From: Anaeramoeba ignava BMAN
Lineage: Eukaryota; Protista; Anaeramoebae
Assembly (NCBI GenBank): GCA_028826165.1
Contig: JAPDFW010000125.1
Span: 1 to 64,000 of the forward strand
Length of the DNA: 64,000 nucleotides
Direction of reading: 5' to 3'
Part shown: piece after piece, positions 28,844 through 36,832 of the stretch
Layout of the letters: every line of letters begins with the position of its first letter
Numbering within the stretch: the stretch's first letter is position 1
Position numbers and translations under genes: made by a program
The notes under the pieces: generated by a model
What the model was told of the DNA's origin: nothing
Seen by the model: the letters and a program-made list of their open reading frames with translations, nothing else
Database searches by the model: none

Positions 28844-31800
28844 ATGTTGAGATTAAATAGGTTATTTCATTTATCAGATAATTCAATTACTAAAAATATA
28901 ACACATACAATTCCACAATCAAAAGAAAGTAAAAATAAATTTAAAGAAAAGAAATTTAAAAAAAAATTTTTTTGATGAAATTTTAAAATAATTTTTTCCA
29001 AATAATAATTTTATTATTAGTAAGTAAAGAAAGCAAAAACGAAGATGATTTAGAAAATGAAATAAATATTGAAAATAAAATAAATATTGAAAATGAAATA
29101 AATATTGAAAATGAAATAAATATTGAAAATAATTTAAATATTGAAAATGATTTGGAAAATGATTTGGAAAATGATTTGGAAAATGATTTAAAAAGTGATT
29201 TAGAGAAAAAATACTTACTAGAAACTCCTATACTTGTTGGACAAGAATATAACATAAAAGAATCTAAATCAACTTTAATTGTTTCTCGACTTGGAATTGA
29301 TAATGTATTTAAATTATACATTTTTAAAATGAATGAATTTTTTTTTAATATTGTTAAAATTGTTTTTTTAGTTGGGAAATATTGTTTCATTTTTAGATCT
29401 TCTTGACCCTAGAACTTATAATAGAAAAACTATTTATCAACATAATGAAATATTTAATTGTGTTAATGCTAGCATTAATCATAATGAAACATTTTTAGGT
29501 TTGTAGTTTTATTTTGAATTTTAAAATTTTGAATTTAATTTTAATTTAAATTTAAATTTTTGAATTTAGCTTTTACATTATTGAAAGAAAAGAGAGAAGC
29601 TAGTCTTTTATCTCGTGCGTTTTTATTTTTTATGATAAAAATTTATTTATAATAATTGATTGATTGAAAAAATAATATAAAATAATATAAAATAATATAA
29701 TATAAAAAAAGGTTATTATGAATCTTATTTAGTGCAATTAAAAAATAATAACATGATTACGGAAATTGATGCTCCATCAAGCTATTTCTGTTCTGTTATT
29801 GTATAAAATTCCAAAAAAATTAAATCAAATTAAATTCATTTAAAATAATTTTTTTTGTTCAGTTTCTTCCTTATTATCGTCGATTTAGAGATTATTTCCT
29901 TTTTATCAAAGATAGAAAATTAATTAATGTTTGCTTTATTAAATCGAAAAGAATTGCAATGGTAGAAAATATTTGGATTCAAAAAAAAAAATCAATTTAT
30001 TTATTTATTAATTTATTGAATTGTTTATGGAAAAAAAAAATATTCAAAAGAAAAAAAACCGAAAATTGGAAATAAAAGTTTCAACAAAAATTTGTAATAC
30101 CTTCATTTGGTATGAATATGTGCCTGAATTGAAAAAGTTATTTATAATTGGATTAAACAAGCAACGCCATAAACTTGTATGCATTAATTTGCAAACAAAA
30201 AGTTTTCAAAAGGAACTTGAATTTGATTTGGATTTCAGTGCTCCTAAACTTAGAAATAAAGAAGTTTCTTTATTTTATGATCATGAATATTTCACTCATG
30301 GTCATATACTGCCAAATTGGCTAATTAGATTTAAAATTATTTATATTAATAATGTAAACAGACAAACAAACAAAAAAAAAAGCCAATTTTCAAATTGACA
30401 AAAATTTTTTATTGGATTATCATTTTTAAAATTAAAAACAAAACAAAACAAAAGGAAGATTTTTGTTTGATTCAAGAAAGCTTGCAATTTGATTCAAAAA
30501 ATGGTTATTTTCTTAACGTTTGTATTTGGATTTATTTTAAAAATGAAAAATTAGAACTCAAAATTCCTTTAAAAGGAATCAAAGAAGAATTTATCCGAAG
30601 AATTCGATCATTTTTTGGAGCAATTTTCCAACTTCTTGTTATTTATATTCCTGGTTATTTTATACAGTTAATTGATTTTTCAAATTTACATGAAACTTGT
30701 GAATTATTTCGTTTAATTGGTGAATTAAAATAATTTTAATTTTAATATGAAATTTTAATATGAAATTTTAATTGAAATTTAAAATTGAAGGAAATCAACA
30801 CTCAACTTCATTAAAAAATGAAACAGAATTTTCCATTTCAAATATTTCACCAGTCGTTTTATCATCAGTTAAGGAAATTGAAAATTACAGTAAAACAATT
30901 TTATTTGGAAAAAAAAAACGATATTCAAAAATAAAAAAATATAAAAATAAAAATAAAAATAATTCAGGAAATTTTTTCATTGATAATTCAAATGGAACAG
31001 TCTATAATTTTCGATTGGATTCAAACTATTTTTTAACCACATTTTGCAAAGAAAAAACTGAAAATTGGATTTATTGGATTCATGTTGGAAATATTCATAT
31101 CAAAGATGAATCAATTGCAGAAAATTCGATTCATCATCTTGCACTTGAATCTCCTTTTAATTTAACAAAAGAATTATTTATTGAGCATTTAGTAGGAGCT
31201 ACTTATCAAAATTTTAAACAATATTTAAAGGAAAATCGACAAAAAAACTTGATTGAATTTACAAAAAACAATTTGCCAGTTACATCATTATTAGCATTTA
31301 AATTTGTTGTAAATGAAATTAAATGAAAAACAAAAAAAAAATTCATCCTGAAAAAAAAAAACAACAACAACAACAATCACAATAAAACACAATTAGAATC
31401 AACACTCAATTTCAGAATTGCTTAAAGCTAATTATTCAAATAATACTCATCATAACTATCAAACATTTAATGAAACAAATGGATATATTTTTTCCAAATA
31501 CAGAAAACCAGATCTGAAAGAAATAATTGATATATATTTAAAATCAAAAGAAAATGAATTATTTCTTGAATGCAAATTAAATACACATAAGAAAAAAGAG
31601 AAAACGAAACAAGGAAAAGTGGAAGATTTTCCAACAGAAAAAGAAATATTATCACAATCCATTTTTTATTATTTTAACAAAAATTTATCTGTGAAATTTA
31701 AAAACTCGTATGAAACAGCAAGCGAATTAACAAAAATATATCTCACTTGCCAAGAACAAACAGTGGAAAGATTGTTTTCAATTCTTCAATATTCATTATT

Positions 31801-32538
31801 AGTTCCTGAAAAAGTTTGGAAACAAAATGAGAATCTTCCACTTTTAAATTGTCCAATAGATACATTGGAATTTGTTTATCATCTCCTTAAATACGATACA
31901 TCACATGTTTTGCCAAATCCTTTTGGCGATAATTCAGAGCTTCGAATGGAGCCAAATAGATCTGGTTATATTTCTTTTTATGAGGATTTAAATTCAAACA
32001 AAGGAATTGATCCAAATTATTATGTTAAAATTTTTCAAACATATCAAAACGCGTTTAATATTTTAAACAATTTGTATTTTGCTTTGCAAGAGTTACATGT
32101 ACCCTTTCCAAGTCTTTTCCATTATCATTTTTGTCGGTTGAGTTTTGTATGTTTGGAACAAAGGTAAAAAAATCAAAAAATCAAAAAATCAAAAAATCAA
32201 AAAATCAAAAAATCAAAAAATCAAAAAATCAAAAAAGGAAATTTTTGGAATATGTTGATAATAAAGTTGTGATTCCAGATGTTAATTTTGTAAAAGAAGT
32301 TTTGAAATTTATGGCAAATCCATCTTTTAATTTTAGAATAAGACTTGCAAATTCTTTAACTTCAGATGAAATGCATGATGTTATTGATTTATATCCTGAT
32401 CTTTTCCCAAATTCTTTTTCTTTTTGTTGGTATGTTGTAAATCCTATTGATGATCCTTGGGAAAATTTGATTGAAGAAGATTTCTTAGAACTTCCATTTG
32501 AAATTGAATTAATATTTCCAACAAAAAATCAATTTTGA
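28844..32538 (+). CDS. Gamma-secretase-activating protein (GSAP/pigeon)-like, 11 exons
   Basis: Ten GT-AG introns join ORFs 29152, 30021, 30395, 30772, 31418 and 32131 in frame. Motifs ILVGQE, NASINHNETFLAFT, YESYLVQL, FIWYEY, HLVGATY, LHVPFPSLFHYHFCRLSFVCL, FLEYVDNKV resemble GSAP. Confidence 0.65.
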
Positions 32539-32579: not shown

Positions 32580-35495
32580 TTATTTTTTTTTGAAATTTCT
32601 TTCAATCCAAATAAAAGGTTCATAAATTCCTTTTTTTGAGATAGCACAACAAGTTTGAAAACACCAAGATTGTTCCATTTTTTCAATTTCAAATTCTTCA
32701 TAAATTTCCCGAATTGTCAATTTATTTGGCAAATCAGATTTATTACATAAAAAAACAAAAGGAACATCTTTCATTTCTGGGTCTTTTTGAACTTTTTCAA
32801 ATTCTAATTTTGATTCATGAAGTCTTTCTCTATCATGTAAATCTATAACATAAATAACGCATTGAGTTCCATTAAAATAATGTCTCCATAAAGGACGAAT
32901 TTTATCCATTCCGCCAATATCCCAAATGACAAAATTAGATTTAGTTTTTTTTGTTTTGATTGATTCCACATTAAATCCTATTTCAAAATAAATTTTAATT
33001 TTGAAATAAATTTTAATTTTAATTTTGAATTATTTGCCTATTGTTAATTGTGATATAGCTTCTCCAATCTTTAATTCATATAAAATTGTTGTTTTTCCAG
33101 CTTGATCTAAGCCAAGCATCAAACAACGAATTTCACTCTTTTTGATTTTAGTTTTTTTGCTTAATTCTCTCAATTTATTTTCTTTTTCAGTTAAAAGTGG
33201 TTTTTGAATCAAAATATTATAATACTTTCTATGATAAATATATGCCTTTTTATAGCCATTTTCTTGATTTAAATTTTCATCAATAAATTGTTGTTCTGGT
33301 TTTGAAATGAAAAGAAAATCTCCAAGAAAAATTTCTTTCCATAAACAATCAAGTGAAGAATAAAAAAGAAAATTTTTTGAAACAGAAGCCAGTAAACCTA
33401 AATAATGTTTTGGAAGATATGAAAGAATCTCAATAATTTCATCATCAGAAAGAATTGCAAAATTCCCAAGATTTTCCAAATCAATAAAGTTTTCCTTTTG
33501 GGATTGATTTTGATTTGTATCTTGAATATTTTCCAAATCAATAAATTTCTCCTTTTGGGATTGATTTTGATTTGTGTCTTGAATAAGATTTGCTTCGTAT
33601 TTGCTGACTAAAAAGCAAGAATGAACCCAACCACAAGCACAAGATTTAACGATATATTTTTCAGGAATTGAAACAAGTTGAGGAATTGATATTTCTTTAT
33701 CATCAACTCCAATTCCAAGTTGTCCATATAAATTGGATCCAAGAGAATAGACTTTCCCTCTATTATCCAAAAAGAAGCAATAATCACTATCAAATCCACC
33801 AGCAAAAACTTGGGAAATAAGAATGTCATTTTCTTGTGAAATTATGCATTGAATGAATTTGTTTTGGTCTTGTTTGATTTTGTAATGTGAATGAATGGCT
33901 TTCCCACATAAAAATACTCTTCCATCTTCTCCTAGTAGAATACTTATATCATTTCCACATTCAACTTGTTTTATTGATCCAATATCATAAGGAAGTTCTG
34001 GTAATTCTGGTGTGTTTCTATTTTCAAAATCTCCTAATCCAAGTTGTCCATATTTGTTTTTCCCACAGGAATATACTTTATTTGTTTTGGTAACTACCAT
34101 TATATGATTCCCTCCGATTGAAGCTAATTTTGCTTCACTTATTTTCTGTATTTTTTCTGGATTTGTTCGTTCTTTTTGATCAGAATGACCTAATTGACCA
34201 AAATTATTTTCTCCCCAAGAAAAAGTATCTCCACTTTATTTTGAATTTAATTATTTATTTTTAAATATTTATTTTAGATTTAAATATTTATATTTTAATA
34301 TTTATTTTAGATTTAAATATTTATTTTAGATTTAAATATTTATTTTAGATTTAAATATTTATTTTGAAATATTTAAATATTTATTTTATATTAAAATTTA
34401 TTTATTTTGAATTTAAATATTTTTATTTAAATATTTTTTTTAAATTTTATATTTAAAATTTATTTTATATTTAAATATTTATTTTGGATTTAAATATTTA
34501 TTTTTAGATTTAAATATTTATTTTAAATTTAAATATTTATTTTTTTTAAATTTGGATTTAAATATTTATTTTGGAATTTAAAATATTTATTTTGAATTTA
34601 AAAATATTTTTTTTATATTTTTAAATATTTATTTTAGATTTAAATATTTATATTAGATTTAAATATTTATTTTATATTTAAATATTTATTTTATATTTAA
34701 ATATTTATTTTATATTTAAATATTTATTTTGAATTTAAATATTTATTTTGAATTTAAATATTTATATTTAAATATTTATTTTGAATTTAAATATTTATTT
34801 TATATTTAAATATTTATTTTGGATTTAAATATTTATTTTGGATTTAAATATTTATTTTGAATTTAAATATTTATTTTGGATTTAAATATTTATTTTGGAT
34901 TTAAATATTTATTTTGGATTTAAATATTTATTTTGATTCACTTTTCATCAATTGCAATCCACATTTGATTCCCAGCACAAACATTTACAATCTTTCTCTT
35001 TGTTACTTTATCAAATGAAATTTTATTAAATTTAATTTTGGAAGATTCTTTTTGAGGAATCATTGGTAAAACATGAGAAAATACTTGATTTTCAACTAAT
35101 AAAATTATTGAAAAATCTTTAGCAGAAATTTTTTGGATTGATTTTCGAGTAAATTGTTTATTTTGAATAATAAATTGATTGAGAAAACGAGAATTTGATT
35201 TTAAAGAAGATTTATCATTATCAAAAAGAATTGTATCATCTTGAAAATTAGAAGAATCTGTAATATTTTGTGATTGTAAATTAGGCAATCCCCAAATCAA
35301 TAATTTTCCTGTTGATAATACAATTATAGTAAATGATGATCCACAAACTAAATGAATTATTTTTTCTTTTCGTTTTATTGAATATTTAAGTATTTGATTT
35401 ATTGAAAATGGTTTTCTAGCAAGAATTGATGGAGATTTTCTAAGTAAAAGTGCATTATTTTGATTTGTTCCTGAAAGAAAGATTTTAAAAGACAT
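32580..35495 (-). CDS. RCC1-repeat + F-box + C-terminal Arf-family GTPase fusion protein, 3 exons
   Basis: Exons 35495-34942, 34233-33038, 32977-32580. RCC1 repeats (SWGENNFGQLG, SCGKNKYGQLGLG, SLGSNLYGQLGIG, ACGWVHSCF). F-box LSDDEIIEILSYL...LASVSKNF...LWKE. Arf motifs GLDQAGKTT, TIGFNVE, WDIGGMDKIRPLWRHYF, NKSD, TCCA. Confidence 0.88.
34234..34941. repeat. Intronic 19-20-mer built on the palindrome taaatattta
   Basis: (taaatatttattttg(g/a)att)n, most homogeneous near the donor end (34680-34935). Confidence 0.88.
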
Positions 35496-35698: not shown

Positions 35699-36832
35699 TT
35701 ATTCAATTTCAAAAAATTTTTTTAAAATTGCAAAATTTTGAAGAAAGTTTATAAAATCTCTTTCAGTAAATTCATCTTCTGAAAATCTTGCTCGTTCATA
35801 CATTTCAACAAAATATTTACACAATTTTGGATTTAATTCTGGTTCTTTTTTTAAAAGGAATTGCATATAAGCTCTAACAGATTGTGAATCTAAACGAGCC
35901 AATGAAGGATCTTTTCGTTTTGCAAGTTGTTCTAAAAAGAAGAAAATAATTTTTTAATTTTTTAATTTAATTTTTTAATTTAATTTTTTAATTTAATTTT
36001 TTAATTTAATTTTTTAATTTAATTTTTTAATTTAATTTTTTTATTTACCAAGAATAAAAGGTGAATCTGCTACAACTCTTTTATAATTCCATTCCGATTT
36101 ATGCCATCCAGGTTTTTGTTGTGTTTGTGCAAATTGAAGAATTTGATCATGAATTCTTGATGCTTCTTGAAAACCTGAATAAATATGTCTTAAAGCAGTC
36201 TTAATTTAAATATTTAATTTTAATTTTTAATTTTAATTTTAATTTTGATTTTAATTTTAATTATAATATAGATTTTGATTTTAATTTTGATTTAAATTTT
36301 AATTTTAAATTTTAATTTTAATTTTAAATTTAATTTTGATTTTAATTTAAATATTTATTTTGATTTTAATTTTAATTTTAATTTTAATATTAATTTTAAT
36401 ATTAATTTTAATTTTAATTTTAATTTTAATTTTAATTTTAATTTTTAATTTTAATATTAATTTTTATTTTAATTTTAATTTTATTTTTAATTTTAATTTT
36501 AATTTTAATATTAATATTAATTATAAATACTTCAGGTATATCTTTTTTTGTATTTCTCATTCTTGCTCTTGGAATTTGATTTAATAAACGTCGATGTTTT
36601 CTATATCTATATTGAATCAAAAAAACAACAACCATAAACTAATTTTTTTTTTGTTTATAAAAGAAAAAAAAAGGGGAAAATTTCGTGTTTTTATTTTTTA
36701 TATTAATTTTTTAAATAAATAAAAATTTATATTTTTTTTTTAAATTATTTTTACTAAAAGTCCTAAAATAGAAGTAAAAACAGTGATATGAACTAATGAT
36801 TGTTCAATTGTTTCTTGATTAACATCTGACAT
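35699..36832 (-). CDS. NICE-3/C1orf43/DLT1-like single-pass membrane protein, 4 exons
   Basis: ATG at 36832 and three GT-AG introns. N-terminal TM segment, then a PGW motif, SVRAYMQFL and YERARFSEDEF, typical of the NICE-3 family. Confidence 0.65.

What the first reader, a model, noticed from the sequence alone, without database searches (positions are those of the whole stretch)
32580..35495. RCC1-propeller + F-box + Arf GTPase fusion whose Arf domain has Met in place of catalytic Gln71
Seen: three exons splice in frame into RCC1 repeats, an F-box and a complete Arf G-domain with intact G1 (GLDQAGKTT), switch I (TIGFNVE) and G4 (NKSD). G3 reads WDIGGMDKIR (ATG at 32907-32909) where Arf1 has WDVGGQDKIR. 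Known: Q71L makes Arf1 hydrolysis-defective; F-boxes recruit Skp1-Cul1; RCC1-like propellers bind or activate small GTPases; TRIM23/ARD1 is a precedent for an E3-Arf fusion, with different domains. Inference: an SCF substrate receptor using a GTP-locked, non-myristoylated Arf as bait to capture Arf effectors or GAPs for ubiquitination, possibly regulated by its own propeller.
Basis: partly seen in the sequence, partly recalled or inferred. Interest (0 to 1): 0.8.

Follow-up and report, generated by a model that had tools for sequence, protein, structure and literature searches.

The report
RCC1–F-box–Arf fusion gene copy
This is a real three-exon gene of the anaerobic amoeba Anaeramoeba ignava that joins an RCC1 propeller, an F-box and an Arf GTPase domain lacking its catalytic glutamine. 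It is one copy of a fusion family found in many protist groups, listed in a 2021 survey and never studied.

Summary
On the minus strand, three exons (35495-34942, 34233-33038, 32977-32580) read in frame as a seven-bladed RCC1-like propeller, an F-box with a helical linker, and an Arf1/6-like G domain. ATG at 32909-32907 sits where Arf1 has Gln71.

- **Intron 2 donor.** It is GC, not GT, and no GT lies nearby. The public models split the locus into a 585-aa protein ending TIGK* and a 109-aa fragment that starts at this very Met. RNA reads could not be obtained, so splicing of the Arf exon is inferred, not shown.
- **Met is not special.** Nine paralogous loci in this genome, and relatives in A. 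flamelloides, Archamoebae, other Amoebozoa, diplonemids, a Picozoa sp. and Apiculatamorpha, all lack Gln. Pro is the commonest replacement, then Glu, with Gly, Ala, Ser, Leu, Ile and Met also seen.
- **Prior art.** Vargová et al. 2021 list "RCC, F-box-like" Arf proteins in a supplementary table. This scan has also reported paralogous copies on other pieces of this genome.

The SCF-receptor reading is plausible: the F-box fold is supported, Skp1 and cullins are in the genome, and the Arf domain sits where F-box proteins carry their substrate-binding domain, as in FBXO4. It is untested. I class this as a new member of a known but uncharacterised kind, of moderate interest.

The parts
34942..35495 (-). 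Exon 1: start codon and the first roughly 2.5 blades of the RCC1-like propeller, with a low-complexity loop
   Evidence: the public model uses the same exon. AlphaFold2 pLDDT is above 90 for residues 1-70 and 110-184.
34234..34941 (-). Intron 1: 708 nt, GT..AG, 4.9% G+C, almost entirely 37.5 copies of a 19-nt unit
   Evidence: All paralogues have a repeat-filled intron at the same position.
33038..34233 (-). Exon 2: the remaining propeller blades, spacer, F-box, helical linker and the Arf N-terminus (G1 to the Thr-Ile-Gly of switch I)
   Evidence: Pfam RCC1 7.9e-39 and Arf 2.1e-8. The model of P0001:1-430 has pLDDT 88 and pTM 0.87, and matches complete RCC1-like domains of HERC2, RPGR, HERC1 and RCC1 with target TM about 0.8.
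33471..33585 (-). In-frame 57-nt x 2 tandem duplication in the spacer between propeller and F-box
   Evidence: translation.
33336..33452 (-). F-box. The usual Leu-Pro is Leu-Ser in this copy.
   Evidence: Pfam F-box 5.3e-4, 20.2 bits against a cut-off of 20.5, for this copy. All 7 paralogue pieces hit F-box-like or F-box models, best 1.3e-10. AlphaFold2 pLDDT is 94-96. Foldseek hits include Skp2 at rmsd 1.1 A over 41 residues, Fbw7, FBXO3 and FBXO4.
33153..33335 (-). Helical linker between the F-box and the G domain; holds the family's conserved Trp/Tyr-Lys motif
   Evidence: Alignments A1 and A2. Helices have pLDDT 89-93 up to residue 85. 76-92 columns align to the F-box plus linker of Fbw7, Cdc4 and FBXO3.
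33090..33113 (-). G1 / P-loop GLDQAGKT
32978..33037 (-). Intron 2: 60 nt, GC..AG, phase 1 inside the Gly codon of TIG|FNVE, in frame, with a TAA at 33032-33030
   Evidence: Six paralogues have a GT donor at the same site. The public model P0001 reads through to TIGK*.
32580..32977 (-). Exon 3: the Arf domain from switch I (FNVE) to the C-terminus, plus the stop codon
   Evidence: Pfam Arf 3.1e-35. Best PDB matches are Arf6 and Arf1 at 5e-34. A separate 109-aa public model, P0288, starts at the G3 Met.
32907..32909 (-). ATG = Met at the position of Arf1 Gln71 / Arf6 Gln67 in G3 (WDIGGMDKIRPLWRHYF)
32733..32744 (-). G4 NKSD
   Evidence: frame checked.

Best explanation
**What it is.** The locus is one of nine paralogous loci in Anaeramoeba ignava of a fusion family found in several distant protist groups. 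The layout is a seven-bladed RCC1-like propeller, then an F-box, then a helical linker, then an Arf1/6-like G domain. If intron 2 is removed through its GC-AG borders, the product is a 715-aa protein.

**How it most likely works.** I think it is the receptor subunit of a Skp1-cullin ubiquitin ligase.
- The F-box docks on Skp1.
- The Arf domain sits where F-box proteins carry their substrate-binding domain. It keeps the nucleotide-binding motifs and an Arf1-identical switch II, but lacks the catalytic Gln, as every family member does. I expect it to act as a slowly hydrolysing or non-hydrolysing nucleotide-dependent binding module, not a cycling switch. It would either hold partners of GTP-Arf or hold the ligase at Arf-positive membranes.
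- The N-terminal propeller would be a second binding or regulatory platform.

**Shown:** the domains, their folds, the family and its spread, the loss of Gln across the family, and Skp1 and cullins in the genome.

**Inferred:** GC-AG splicing, Skp1 binding, nucleotide binding without hydrolysis, and any target.
For: **Architecture.** Pfam, the propeller model and its PDB matches, and the F-box and linker model and its PDB matches.

**Family in this genome.** Eight further loci share the exon plan, and six of them have an intron at the same phase-1 site as intron 2.

**Family elsewhere.** A profile of F-box + linker + Arf N-terminus matches in one stretch proteins of A. flamelloides, Pelomyxa, Mastigamoeba, Soliformovum, Copromyxa, Amoeba proteus, Diplonema, Flectonema, a Picozoa sp. 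and Apiculatamorpha.

**Common origin.** The propellers of 19 fusion proteins fall on one side of a branch against the 16 best non-fusion RCC1 proteins (78/97, 75% of bootstrap trees). The eight Anaeramoeba propellers form a clade at 100/99, with the two species interleaved.

**Missing Gln.** No propeller-bearing member has Gln in G3, whereas the ordinary Arfs of the same genome all read WD.GGQ.

**Ligase partners.** Skp1 and cullins are in the genome.

**Exon 3 is still under constraint.** It has 131 open codons in a genome where the other two frames carry 4 and 18 stops. Its G+C is exon-like at 26%, against 10% for intron 2. Its end branch is the shortest among the distinct A. ignava family members in the Arf tree, 0.52 against 0.98-1.59; only the close pair C65/C20 is shorter.

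**GC-AG splicing occurs here.** 20 of 32,108 annotated introns in this genome are GC-AG (PMC11550330, supplement 1).

[quoted passage not shown] In RhoBTB an atypical GTPase domain gates a cullin-3 adaptor (PMC4931677). HERC1's RCC1-like domains bind ARF1 and release its nucleotide (PMC6692442).
Against: - No RNA evidence for removal of intron 2.
- The public models end at TIGK* and start a separate fragment at the G3 Met.
- No full-length product of this locus is in the protein collection.
- This copy's F-box is the weakest of the family. It scores just under Pfam's cut-off and has Leu-Ser for Leu-Pro.
- Its switch I is one residue shorter than in Arf1 and the paralogues, and lacks TTIP.
- Its pre-G1 segment has no obvious amphipathic helix (read).
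- The Foldseek E-values for the F-box are weak, 7.5e-3 or worse.
- The Arf-domain tree is unresolved.
- No biochemical data exist for any member of the family.
Confidence: 0.6

Rival explanations
1. This copy is broken or split. The T-to-C change at the second base of the intron 2 donor stopped splicing. The product would then be the annotated 585-aa RCC1 + F-box protein with a 40-residue Arf stub, and exon 3 would be a young relic or a separately called fragment.
For: - The public models are exactly this: P0001 ends TIGK* and P0288 starts at the G3 Met.
- GC-AG introns are rare here, 20 of 32,108.
- There is no alternative GT donor.
- This copy also has the weakest F-box and an altered switch I.
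- Other family copies carry frame breaks, at the C46 and C139 loci.
Against: - Exon 3 is fully open and scores 3.1e-35 against the Arf model.
- Switch II is identical to Arf1 except for Gln to Met.
- The acceptor AG and the phase are intact, and apart from that one base the donor matches the GTAAAT of two paralogues.
- The Arf branch of this copy is short, not long.
- Annotation pipelines seldom place GC donors without strong junction support, so the public model is weak evidence.
Confidence: 0.27
2. A GTP-locked Arf domain is the bait of an SCF ligase and delivers Arf effectors or ArfGAPs to ubiquitination, with the propeller acting as its regulator.
For: - The Arf domain occupies the substrate-receptor position after the F-box and linker, as in FBXO4.
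- Switch II, a main effector surface, is conserved.
- Family members in other taxa are almost Arf1-identical in both switches apart from the Gln position.
Against: - Switch I of this copy has diverged.
- The replacing residue varies freely (Pro, Glu, Gly, Ala, Ser, Leu, Ile, Met), and several paralogues also alter DxxG or NKxD. That fits loss of catalysis more than a conserved locked state.
- The model gives no role to a propeller that the whole family conserves.
- No binding data exist.
Confidence: 0.2
3. A membrane-anchored or self-regulated adaptor. The propeller is the substrate or ligand platform. The Arf domain, once loaded by a Sec7 exchange factor, holds the protein on membranes, or it gates the F-box from within the molecule as proposed for RhoBTB. 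The propeller might also act on the Arf domain's nucleotide, as reported for HERC1.
For: - RCC1-like domains serve as binding platforms in HERC2, RPGR and UVR8, which are the best structural matches.
- Family members in other taxa keep an Arf-like hydrophobic/basic helix before G1 (sequences).
- The RhoBTB auto-inhibition model (PMC4931677) and HERC1's action on ARF1 (PMC6692442) are precedents.
Against: - In this copy the pre-G1 segment is charged, not amphipathic.
- There is no N-terminal myristoylation site, because the domain is internal.
- F-box proteins usually carry the substrate receptor C-terminal to the F-box.
Confidence: 0.25

Closest known systems
'RCC, F-box-like' Arf proteins listed by Vargova et al. 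2021 (MbaArf1e and MbaArf1f of Mastigamoeba balamuthi; TtrArlX1 of Thecamonas trahens with Kelch + RCC + F-box)
   Same: Same domain order. The profile of F-box + linker + Arf N-terminus matches the Mastigamoeba protein (P0266, which begins like MbaArf1e) in one stretch. Its propeller falls with the other fusion propellers in the tree. It too lacks Gln, with Glu in its place.
   Different: The survey lists them only in a supplementary table and treats such architectures as lineage-specific. It describes no family, no missing Gln and no Anaeramoeba members. This copy has Met, a GC-AG intron and Leu-Ser in the F-box.
FBXO4 (F-box protein with an atypical small-GTPase domain as substrate receptor)
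   Same: F-box, then a helical linker, then a GTPase-fold domain. FBXO4 chains are among the structural matches of the F-box and linker model (9jkb_D and 3l2o_B). Its GTPase-like domain binds the substrate TRF1 (PMC7086354).
   Different: From general knowledge, the FBXO4 domain is a nucleotide-free GTPase-like fold and not an Arf. FBXO4 has no RCC1 propeller. No sequence relationship was tested.
TRIM23 / ARD1
   Same: A ubiquitin-ligase module fused to a C-terminal Arf domain. Vargova et al. cite it as the precedent.
   Different: TRIM23 has RING, B-box and coiled-coil domains and no F-box or propeller. No such domains were found here.
RhoBTB proteins
   Same: An atypical small GTPase domain fused to a cullin-adaptor module. 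In the published model the GTPase domain gates cullin binding (PMC4931677).
   Different: Rho family rather than Arf, BTB with cullin 3 rather than F-box with Skp1 and cullin 1, and the GTPase is N-terminal.
HERC1 (p619)
   Same: RCC1-like domains in a ubiquitin ligase that bind ARF1 and release its nucleotide (PMC6692442). HERC RCC1-like domains are the best structural matches of this propeller.
   Different: HERC1 is a HECT ligase, and ARF1 is a separate protein there. Here the Arf domain is in the same chain.
Arf1 Q71L / Arf6 Q67L laboratory mutants
   Same: The same position carries a hydrophobic residue. Arf6 Q67L chains are the best PDB matches of exon 3.
   Different: Those are engineered single changes in otherwise normal, myristoylated Arfs. 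Here switch I is also changed and the domain is internal.

Membership tests
RCC1-F-box-Arf fusion family | N-terminal complete RCC1-like seven-bladed propeller | tested here: met
   Pfam RCC1 7.9e-39. AlphaFold2 pLDDT 88 and pTM 0.87. Target TM about 0.8 to whole RCC1-like domains.
RCC1-F-box-Arf fusion family | F-box between the propeller and the G domain | tested here: met
   This copy scores 5.3e-4, just under Pfam's cut-off. All 7 paralogue pieces hit F-box models. The fold model and its F-box/Skp1 structural matches agree.
RCC1-F-box-Arf fusion family | C-terminal Arf-family G domain in the same reading frame | tested here: inconclusive
   Both halves are present and in frame. Joining them needs a GC-AG intron for which no RNA evidence was obtained.
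RCC1-F-box-Arf fusion family | One-stretch profile match over F-box, linker and Arf N-terminus with members from other taxa | tested here: met
   P0001 scores 1.3e-50, and members of about ten genera match profile positions 1-146.
RCC1-F-box-Arf fusion family | Propeller groups with the propellers of other fusion proteins | tested here: met
   fusion against non-fusion split at 78/97; Anaeramoeba clade at 100/99.
RCC1-F-box-Arf fusion family | No catalytic Gln in G3 | tested here: met
   Met here. No propeller-bearing member has Gln.
Canonical Arf GTPase | G1, G3 (DxxG), G4 (NKxD) and G5 nucleotide-binding motifs | tested here: met
   GLDQAGKT, DIGG, NKSD and CAI, read.
Canonical Arf GTPase | Catalytic Gln after DxxG (Arf1 Gln71) | tested here: not met
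   ATG (Met) at 32909-32907.
Canonical Arf GTPase | N-terminal Gly2 myristoylation site and amphipathic helix | tested here: not met
   The domain is internal, and the segment before G1 in this copy is charged.
Canonical Arf GTPase | GTP binding and GAP-stimulated hydrolysis | not testable with these tools
   Needs biochemistry.
SCF F-box substrate receptor | F-box three-helix fold | tested here: met
   Skp2 F-box at rmsd 1.1 A over 41 residues; Foldseek probabilities 0.95-0.99, but E-values of 7.5e-3 or worse.
SCF F-box substrate receptor | Conserved Leu-Pro at the start of the F-box | tested here: not met
   This copy has Leu-Ser. Six of the seven aligned paralogue pieces have Pro.
SCF F-box substrate receptor | Skp1 and cullin encoded in the genome | tested here: met
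   Skp1 at C55:287920. Several cullin genes.
SCF F-box substrate receptor | Physical binding to Skp1 and ubiquitination of a substrate | not testable with these tools
   Needs a pull-down or a complex prediction with coordinates.
TRIM23/ARD1 | RING, B-box and coiled-coil N-terminal to the Arf domain | tested here: not met
   No such Pfam hits.

The most novel reading that the evidence does not exclude
The RCC1-F-box-Arf proteins could be one ancient class of SCF receptors, possibly as old as the last eukaryotic common ancestor. An Arf domain that cannot hydrolyse GTP by the usual route would sit in the substrate-receptor position and couple GTP-Arf partners or Arf-positive membranes to ubiquitination. 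The class would have been lost from animals, fungi and plants, and so overlooked.
Probability: 0.3. Interest if true: 0.7.

Novelty: new member of a known kind. Interest (0 to 1): 0.42.

Why it matters
For this locus, the result corrects a public annotation that cuts one gene into a truncated RCC1 protein and an Arf fragment.

For the family, it links two central eukaryotic control systems, Arf GTPases and cullin-RING ligases, in a single chain. The family is found in several distant protist groups (Anaeramoeba, Amoebozoa, diplonemids, a Picozoa sp., Apiculatamorpha, and Thecamonas in the 2021 table), always without the catalytic Gln. That pattern gives a concrete hypothesis: a non-cycling Arf module serves as the receptor or anchor of an SCF ligase. 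It could be tested in organisms that can be cultured. From general knowledge, Diplonema papillatum and Acanthamoeba can be transformed.

The 2021 survey treated such architectures as lineage-specific. The propeller tree and the one-stretch profile matches suggest a single origin instead.

Tried and rejected
- **Genomic context of P0001.** The look-up of encoding contigs had no record.
- **Word-based protein searches.**
  - With exon 2, only RCC1 proteins and the truncated public model came back, because of the length window.
  - With the F-box/Arf region of P0001, only the query itself came back.
  - With exon 3, the separate 109-aa model came back and no spliced product.
- **Joined protein.** All searches used single exons by reference, or public proteins.
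- **Arf-domain tree.** The backbone is unresolved. It neither shows nor excludes one origin for the fusion Arf domains. It pairs this copy with the C55 paralogue, while the propeller tree pairs it with C65 and C106. I left this conflict unexplained.
- **Ciliate-type code.** I considered whether TAA codes for Gln, which would let the in-frame intron 2 be read through. I rejected this: Gln is coded by CAA/CAG throughout, the long exons contain no TAA or TAG, and TAA ends the gene.
- **Another donor.** None is available. There is no GT between 33124 and 32969.
- **U12-type intron.** The donor does not resemble the (G/A)TATCCTTT motif described for this genome.
- **TRIM23 or RhoBTB membership.** Their defining domains are absent.
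Full report
**Organism and locus.**
- The window is extremely A+T-rich, with 1-40% G+C in 2-kb steps.
- The product of exons 1 and 2 is identical to an NCBI protein of Anaeramoeba ignava, P0001 (585 aa, 'regulator of chromosome condensation').
- The assembly has 42.8 Mb in 147 contigs.

**Gene structure (minus strand).**
- Exon 1 is 35495-34942.
- Intron 1 is 34941-34234: GT..AG, 708 nt, 4.9% G+C, made of 37.5 copies of a 19-nt unit.
- Exon 2 is 34233-33038.
- Intron 2 is 33037-32978, 60 nt.
- Exon 3 is 32977-32580, including the TAA stop.
- The three exons total 2148 nt, which is 715 codons plus the stop.
- The public model uses the same intron 1.
- Intron 2 starts GC, not GT. It lies in phase 1 inside the Gly codon of TIG|FNVE, is in frame and carries a TAA. 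If it is retained, the product ends TIGK*, exactly as P0001 does.
- There is no GT between 33124 and 32969, so GC..AG is the only way to join the two halves of the Arf domain.
The public annotation therefore cuts this gene in two.

**Domains.**
- Pfam finds RCC1 repeats in exons 1 and 2, an Arf N-terminus at the end of exon 2, and the rest of the Arf domain in exon 3 at 3.1e-35. The F-box hit lies just under Pfam's cut-off.
- The AlphaFold2 model of residues 1-430 has pLDDT 88 and pTM 0.87. It is beta-stranded from residue 3 to 396, so exon 1 contributes real blades.
- That model matches whole RCC1-like domains of HERC2, RPGR, HERC1 and RCC1, with target TM about 0.8.
- The F-box, linker and Arf N-terminus piece was modelled with a 34-row family alignment. 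It has pLDDT 89-96 over the first 85 residues.
- The Foldseek matches of that piece are nearly all F-box proteins solved with Skp1: Fbw7, FBXO4, FBXO3, Cdc4, and Skp2 at rmsd 1.1 A over 41 residues. The E-values are weak, as expected for so small a domain.
- Exon 3 aligns end to end with Arf6 and Arf1. Switch II (DKIRPLWRHYF) is identical to Arf1, and the Met falls on the Leu of Arf6 Q67L crystal chains.
- G1, DxxG, NKxD and the G5 Cys-Ala are all present.
- Three features are particular to this copy:
  - Leu-Ser replaces the F-box Leu-Pro.
  - Switch I is one residue shorter and lacks TTIP.
  - The segment before G1 is charged, not amphipathic.

**A family in this genome.**
- Searches of the assembly with exon 3 and with the F-box/Arf piece found eight further loci: C65, C20, C126, C46, C106, C55, C59 and C139.
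- All of them begin with an RCC1 exon followed by a repeat-filled intron. In C65, C20, C126, C46 and C106 one further exon carries the remaining RCC1 blades, the F-box and the Arf N-terminus. C55, C59 and C139 have an extra break between the propeller and the F-box.
- Six have an intron at exactly the site of intron 2, all with GT donors (GTAAAT twice, GTAATG twice, GTTTGA, GTATAA). The window's GCAAAT differs from GTAAAT by one base.
- The C59/C139 pair lacks this intron.
- Ordinary Arf genes of the genome also have an intron just before GFNVE.
- G3 in the paralogues reads GGS, GGG, GGA, GGA, SGG, GVA and GGG. None has Gln, while the ordinary Arfs all read WD.GGQ.
- Public full-length models exist for five paralogues, P0121 to P0125.

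**The family elsewhere.**
- A profile of the seven F-box + linker + Arf N-terminus pieces was run against 1.84 billion representative proteins. About forty proteins matched all 146 positions in one stretch.
- Their sources are A. flamelloides, Pelomyxa schiedti, Mastigamoeba balamuthi, Soliformovum, Copromyxa, Amoeba proteus, Diplonema papillatum, Flectonema, a Picozoa sp., Apiculatamorpha and metagenomes.
- Pfam confirms RCC1 + F-box + Arf in the eight propeller-bearing representatives scanned. The Soliformovum protein has an extra Kelch propeller.
- In all propeller-bearing members, the Gln position is taken by something else. Pro is the commonest (nine proteins from several distant groups), then Glu (Archamoebae), then Gly, Ala, Ser, Leu, Ile and Met.
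- Gln appears only in a short metagenomic F-box + Arf protein without a propeller (P0263) and in an unrelated multidomain Arf protein (P0215).
- In a tree of the propellers, the 19 fusion proteins fall on one side of a branch against the 16 best non-fusion RCC1 proteins (78/97, 75% of bootstrap trees).
- The eight Anaeramoeba propellers form a clade at 100/99 with the two species interleaved, so the expansion predates their split.
- The Arf-domain tree has too few columns to resolve anything beyond close pairs.

**Prior art.**
- Vargova et al. 2021 (PMC8358228) state that some lineage-specific ARF-family proteins carry BTB or F-box domains.
- Their supplementary table lists MbaArf1e and MbaArf1f as 'RCC, F-box-like', TtrArlX1 as 'Kelch repeats, RCC, F-box', and a Euglena protein as 'RCC1'.
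- The word 'glutamine' does not occur in the main text.
- Neither the Anaeramoeba genome paper nor a 2025 preprint on metamonad ARFs mentions the fusion.
- A wider paper search found nothing else.
- Notes of this scan on other pieces of the same genome describe paralogous copies and reach the same classification. I read them after my own analysis.

**Is the Arf exon used?**

For:
- Exon 3 has 131 open codons, while the other two frames carry 4 and 18 stops.
- Its G+C is exon-like, 26% against 10% for the intron.
- Its Arf score is high.
- Its end branch in the Arf tree is 0.52, shorter than the other distinct A. ignava copies at 0.98-1.59. Only the close pair C65/C20 is shorter.
- GC-AG introns are annotated in this genome, 20 of 32,108.

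Against:
- Such introns are rare.
- The public model does not splice this one.
- No full-length product is in the protein collection.
- I could not obtain reads.

I put about 0.7 on splicing and 0.27 on a recently split gene.

**Mechanism.**
- Skp1 and several cullins are encoded in the genome.
- The G domain follows the F-box and a rigid helical linker, which is the position of the WD40, LRR or other substrate receptor in F-box proteins. FBXO4 uses an atypical small-GTPase domain there (PMC7086354).
- The free choice of residue at the Gln position, and the extra motif changes in some paralogues, point to inherited loss of catalysis, not a tuned lock. From general knowledge, hydrolysis with a residue supplied in trans (as in Rap with RapGAP) cannot be excluded.
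- Other roles fit the RhoBTB and HERC1 precedents equally well: a membrane anchor, an internal gate of the F-box, or a partner of the propeller.
- None of these was testable here.

**Verdict.** The gene and its motifs are real, and the Met is real. The architecture is a catalogued but unstudied kind, and this copy is one of nine loci. What is particular to this copy is the GC donor and the split public annotation. At family level, the added findings are the universal loss of Gln, the wide distribution and the likely single origin.

Noticed in passing
window 32580-35495: The public gene models cut this locus in two. P0001 (585 aa) covers exons 1 and 2 and ends TIGK*. P0288 (109 aa) starts at the G3 Met codon. 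Both look like artefacts of a GC donor the annotation did not use.
   Followed up: yes
window 34235-34936; L046 and L049 (intron 2 of the C20 and C106 paralogues): Introns of this gene family are filled with tandem repeats of different units: 19 nt x 37.5 here, and arrays of 618-646 nt in intron 2 of two paralogues. The same intron positions hold short plain introns in other copies.
   Followed up: partly
window 33471-33585: An in-frame 57-nt x 2 tandem duplication (94% matches) repeats a 19-residue Gln/Asn-rich stretch in the spacer between propeller and F-box.
   Followed up: no
L047 (C126:17800-22800) and L048 (C46:1-4800); L051 (C59) and L052 (C139): Two pairs of near-identical family copies lie on different contigs. 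One member of each pair (C46, C139) has frame breaks. They may be recent segmental duplicates, uncollapsed haplotypes or sequencing errors.
   Followed up: no
L002, L009, L010 (C125, C96, C13): Ordinary Arf genes of the genome have an intron immediately before GFNVE, the same place as intron 2 of the fusion genes. The G-domain part of the fusion therefore seems to keep an Arf intron position.
   Followed up: partly
L018 (C126:226187-226552): Another Arf-like gene without the catalytic Gln (WDIAGNES), with no sign of a propeller or F-box in the stretch seen.
   Followed up: no
window 31418-32538 (+) and 35699-35902 (-): Neighbouring genes. A convergent gene with a weak match to the C-terminus of gamma-secretase-activating protein ends about 40 nt from this gene's stop. 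Upstream is the last exon of a NICE-3-like gene. Neither shows a functional link to this gene.
   Followed up: partly
trees: The Arf exon of this copy pairs with the C55 paralogue (96/88), but its propeller pairs with C65 and C106 (97/90). This could be long-branch attraction or exchange between paralogues.
   Followed up: no
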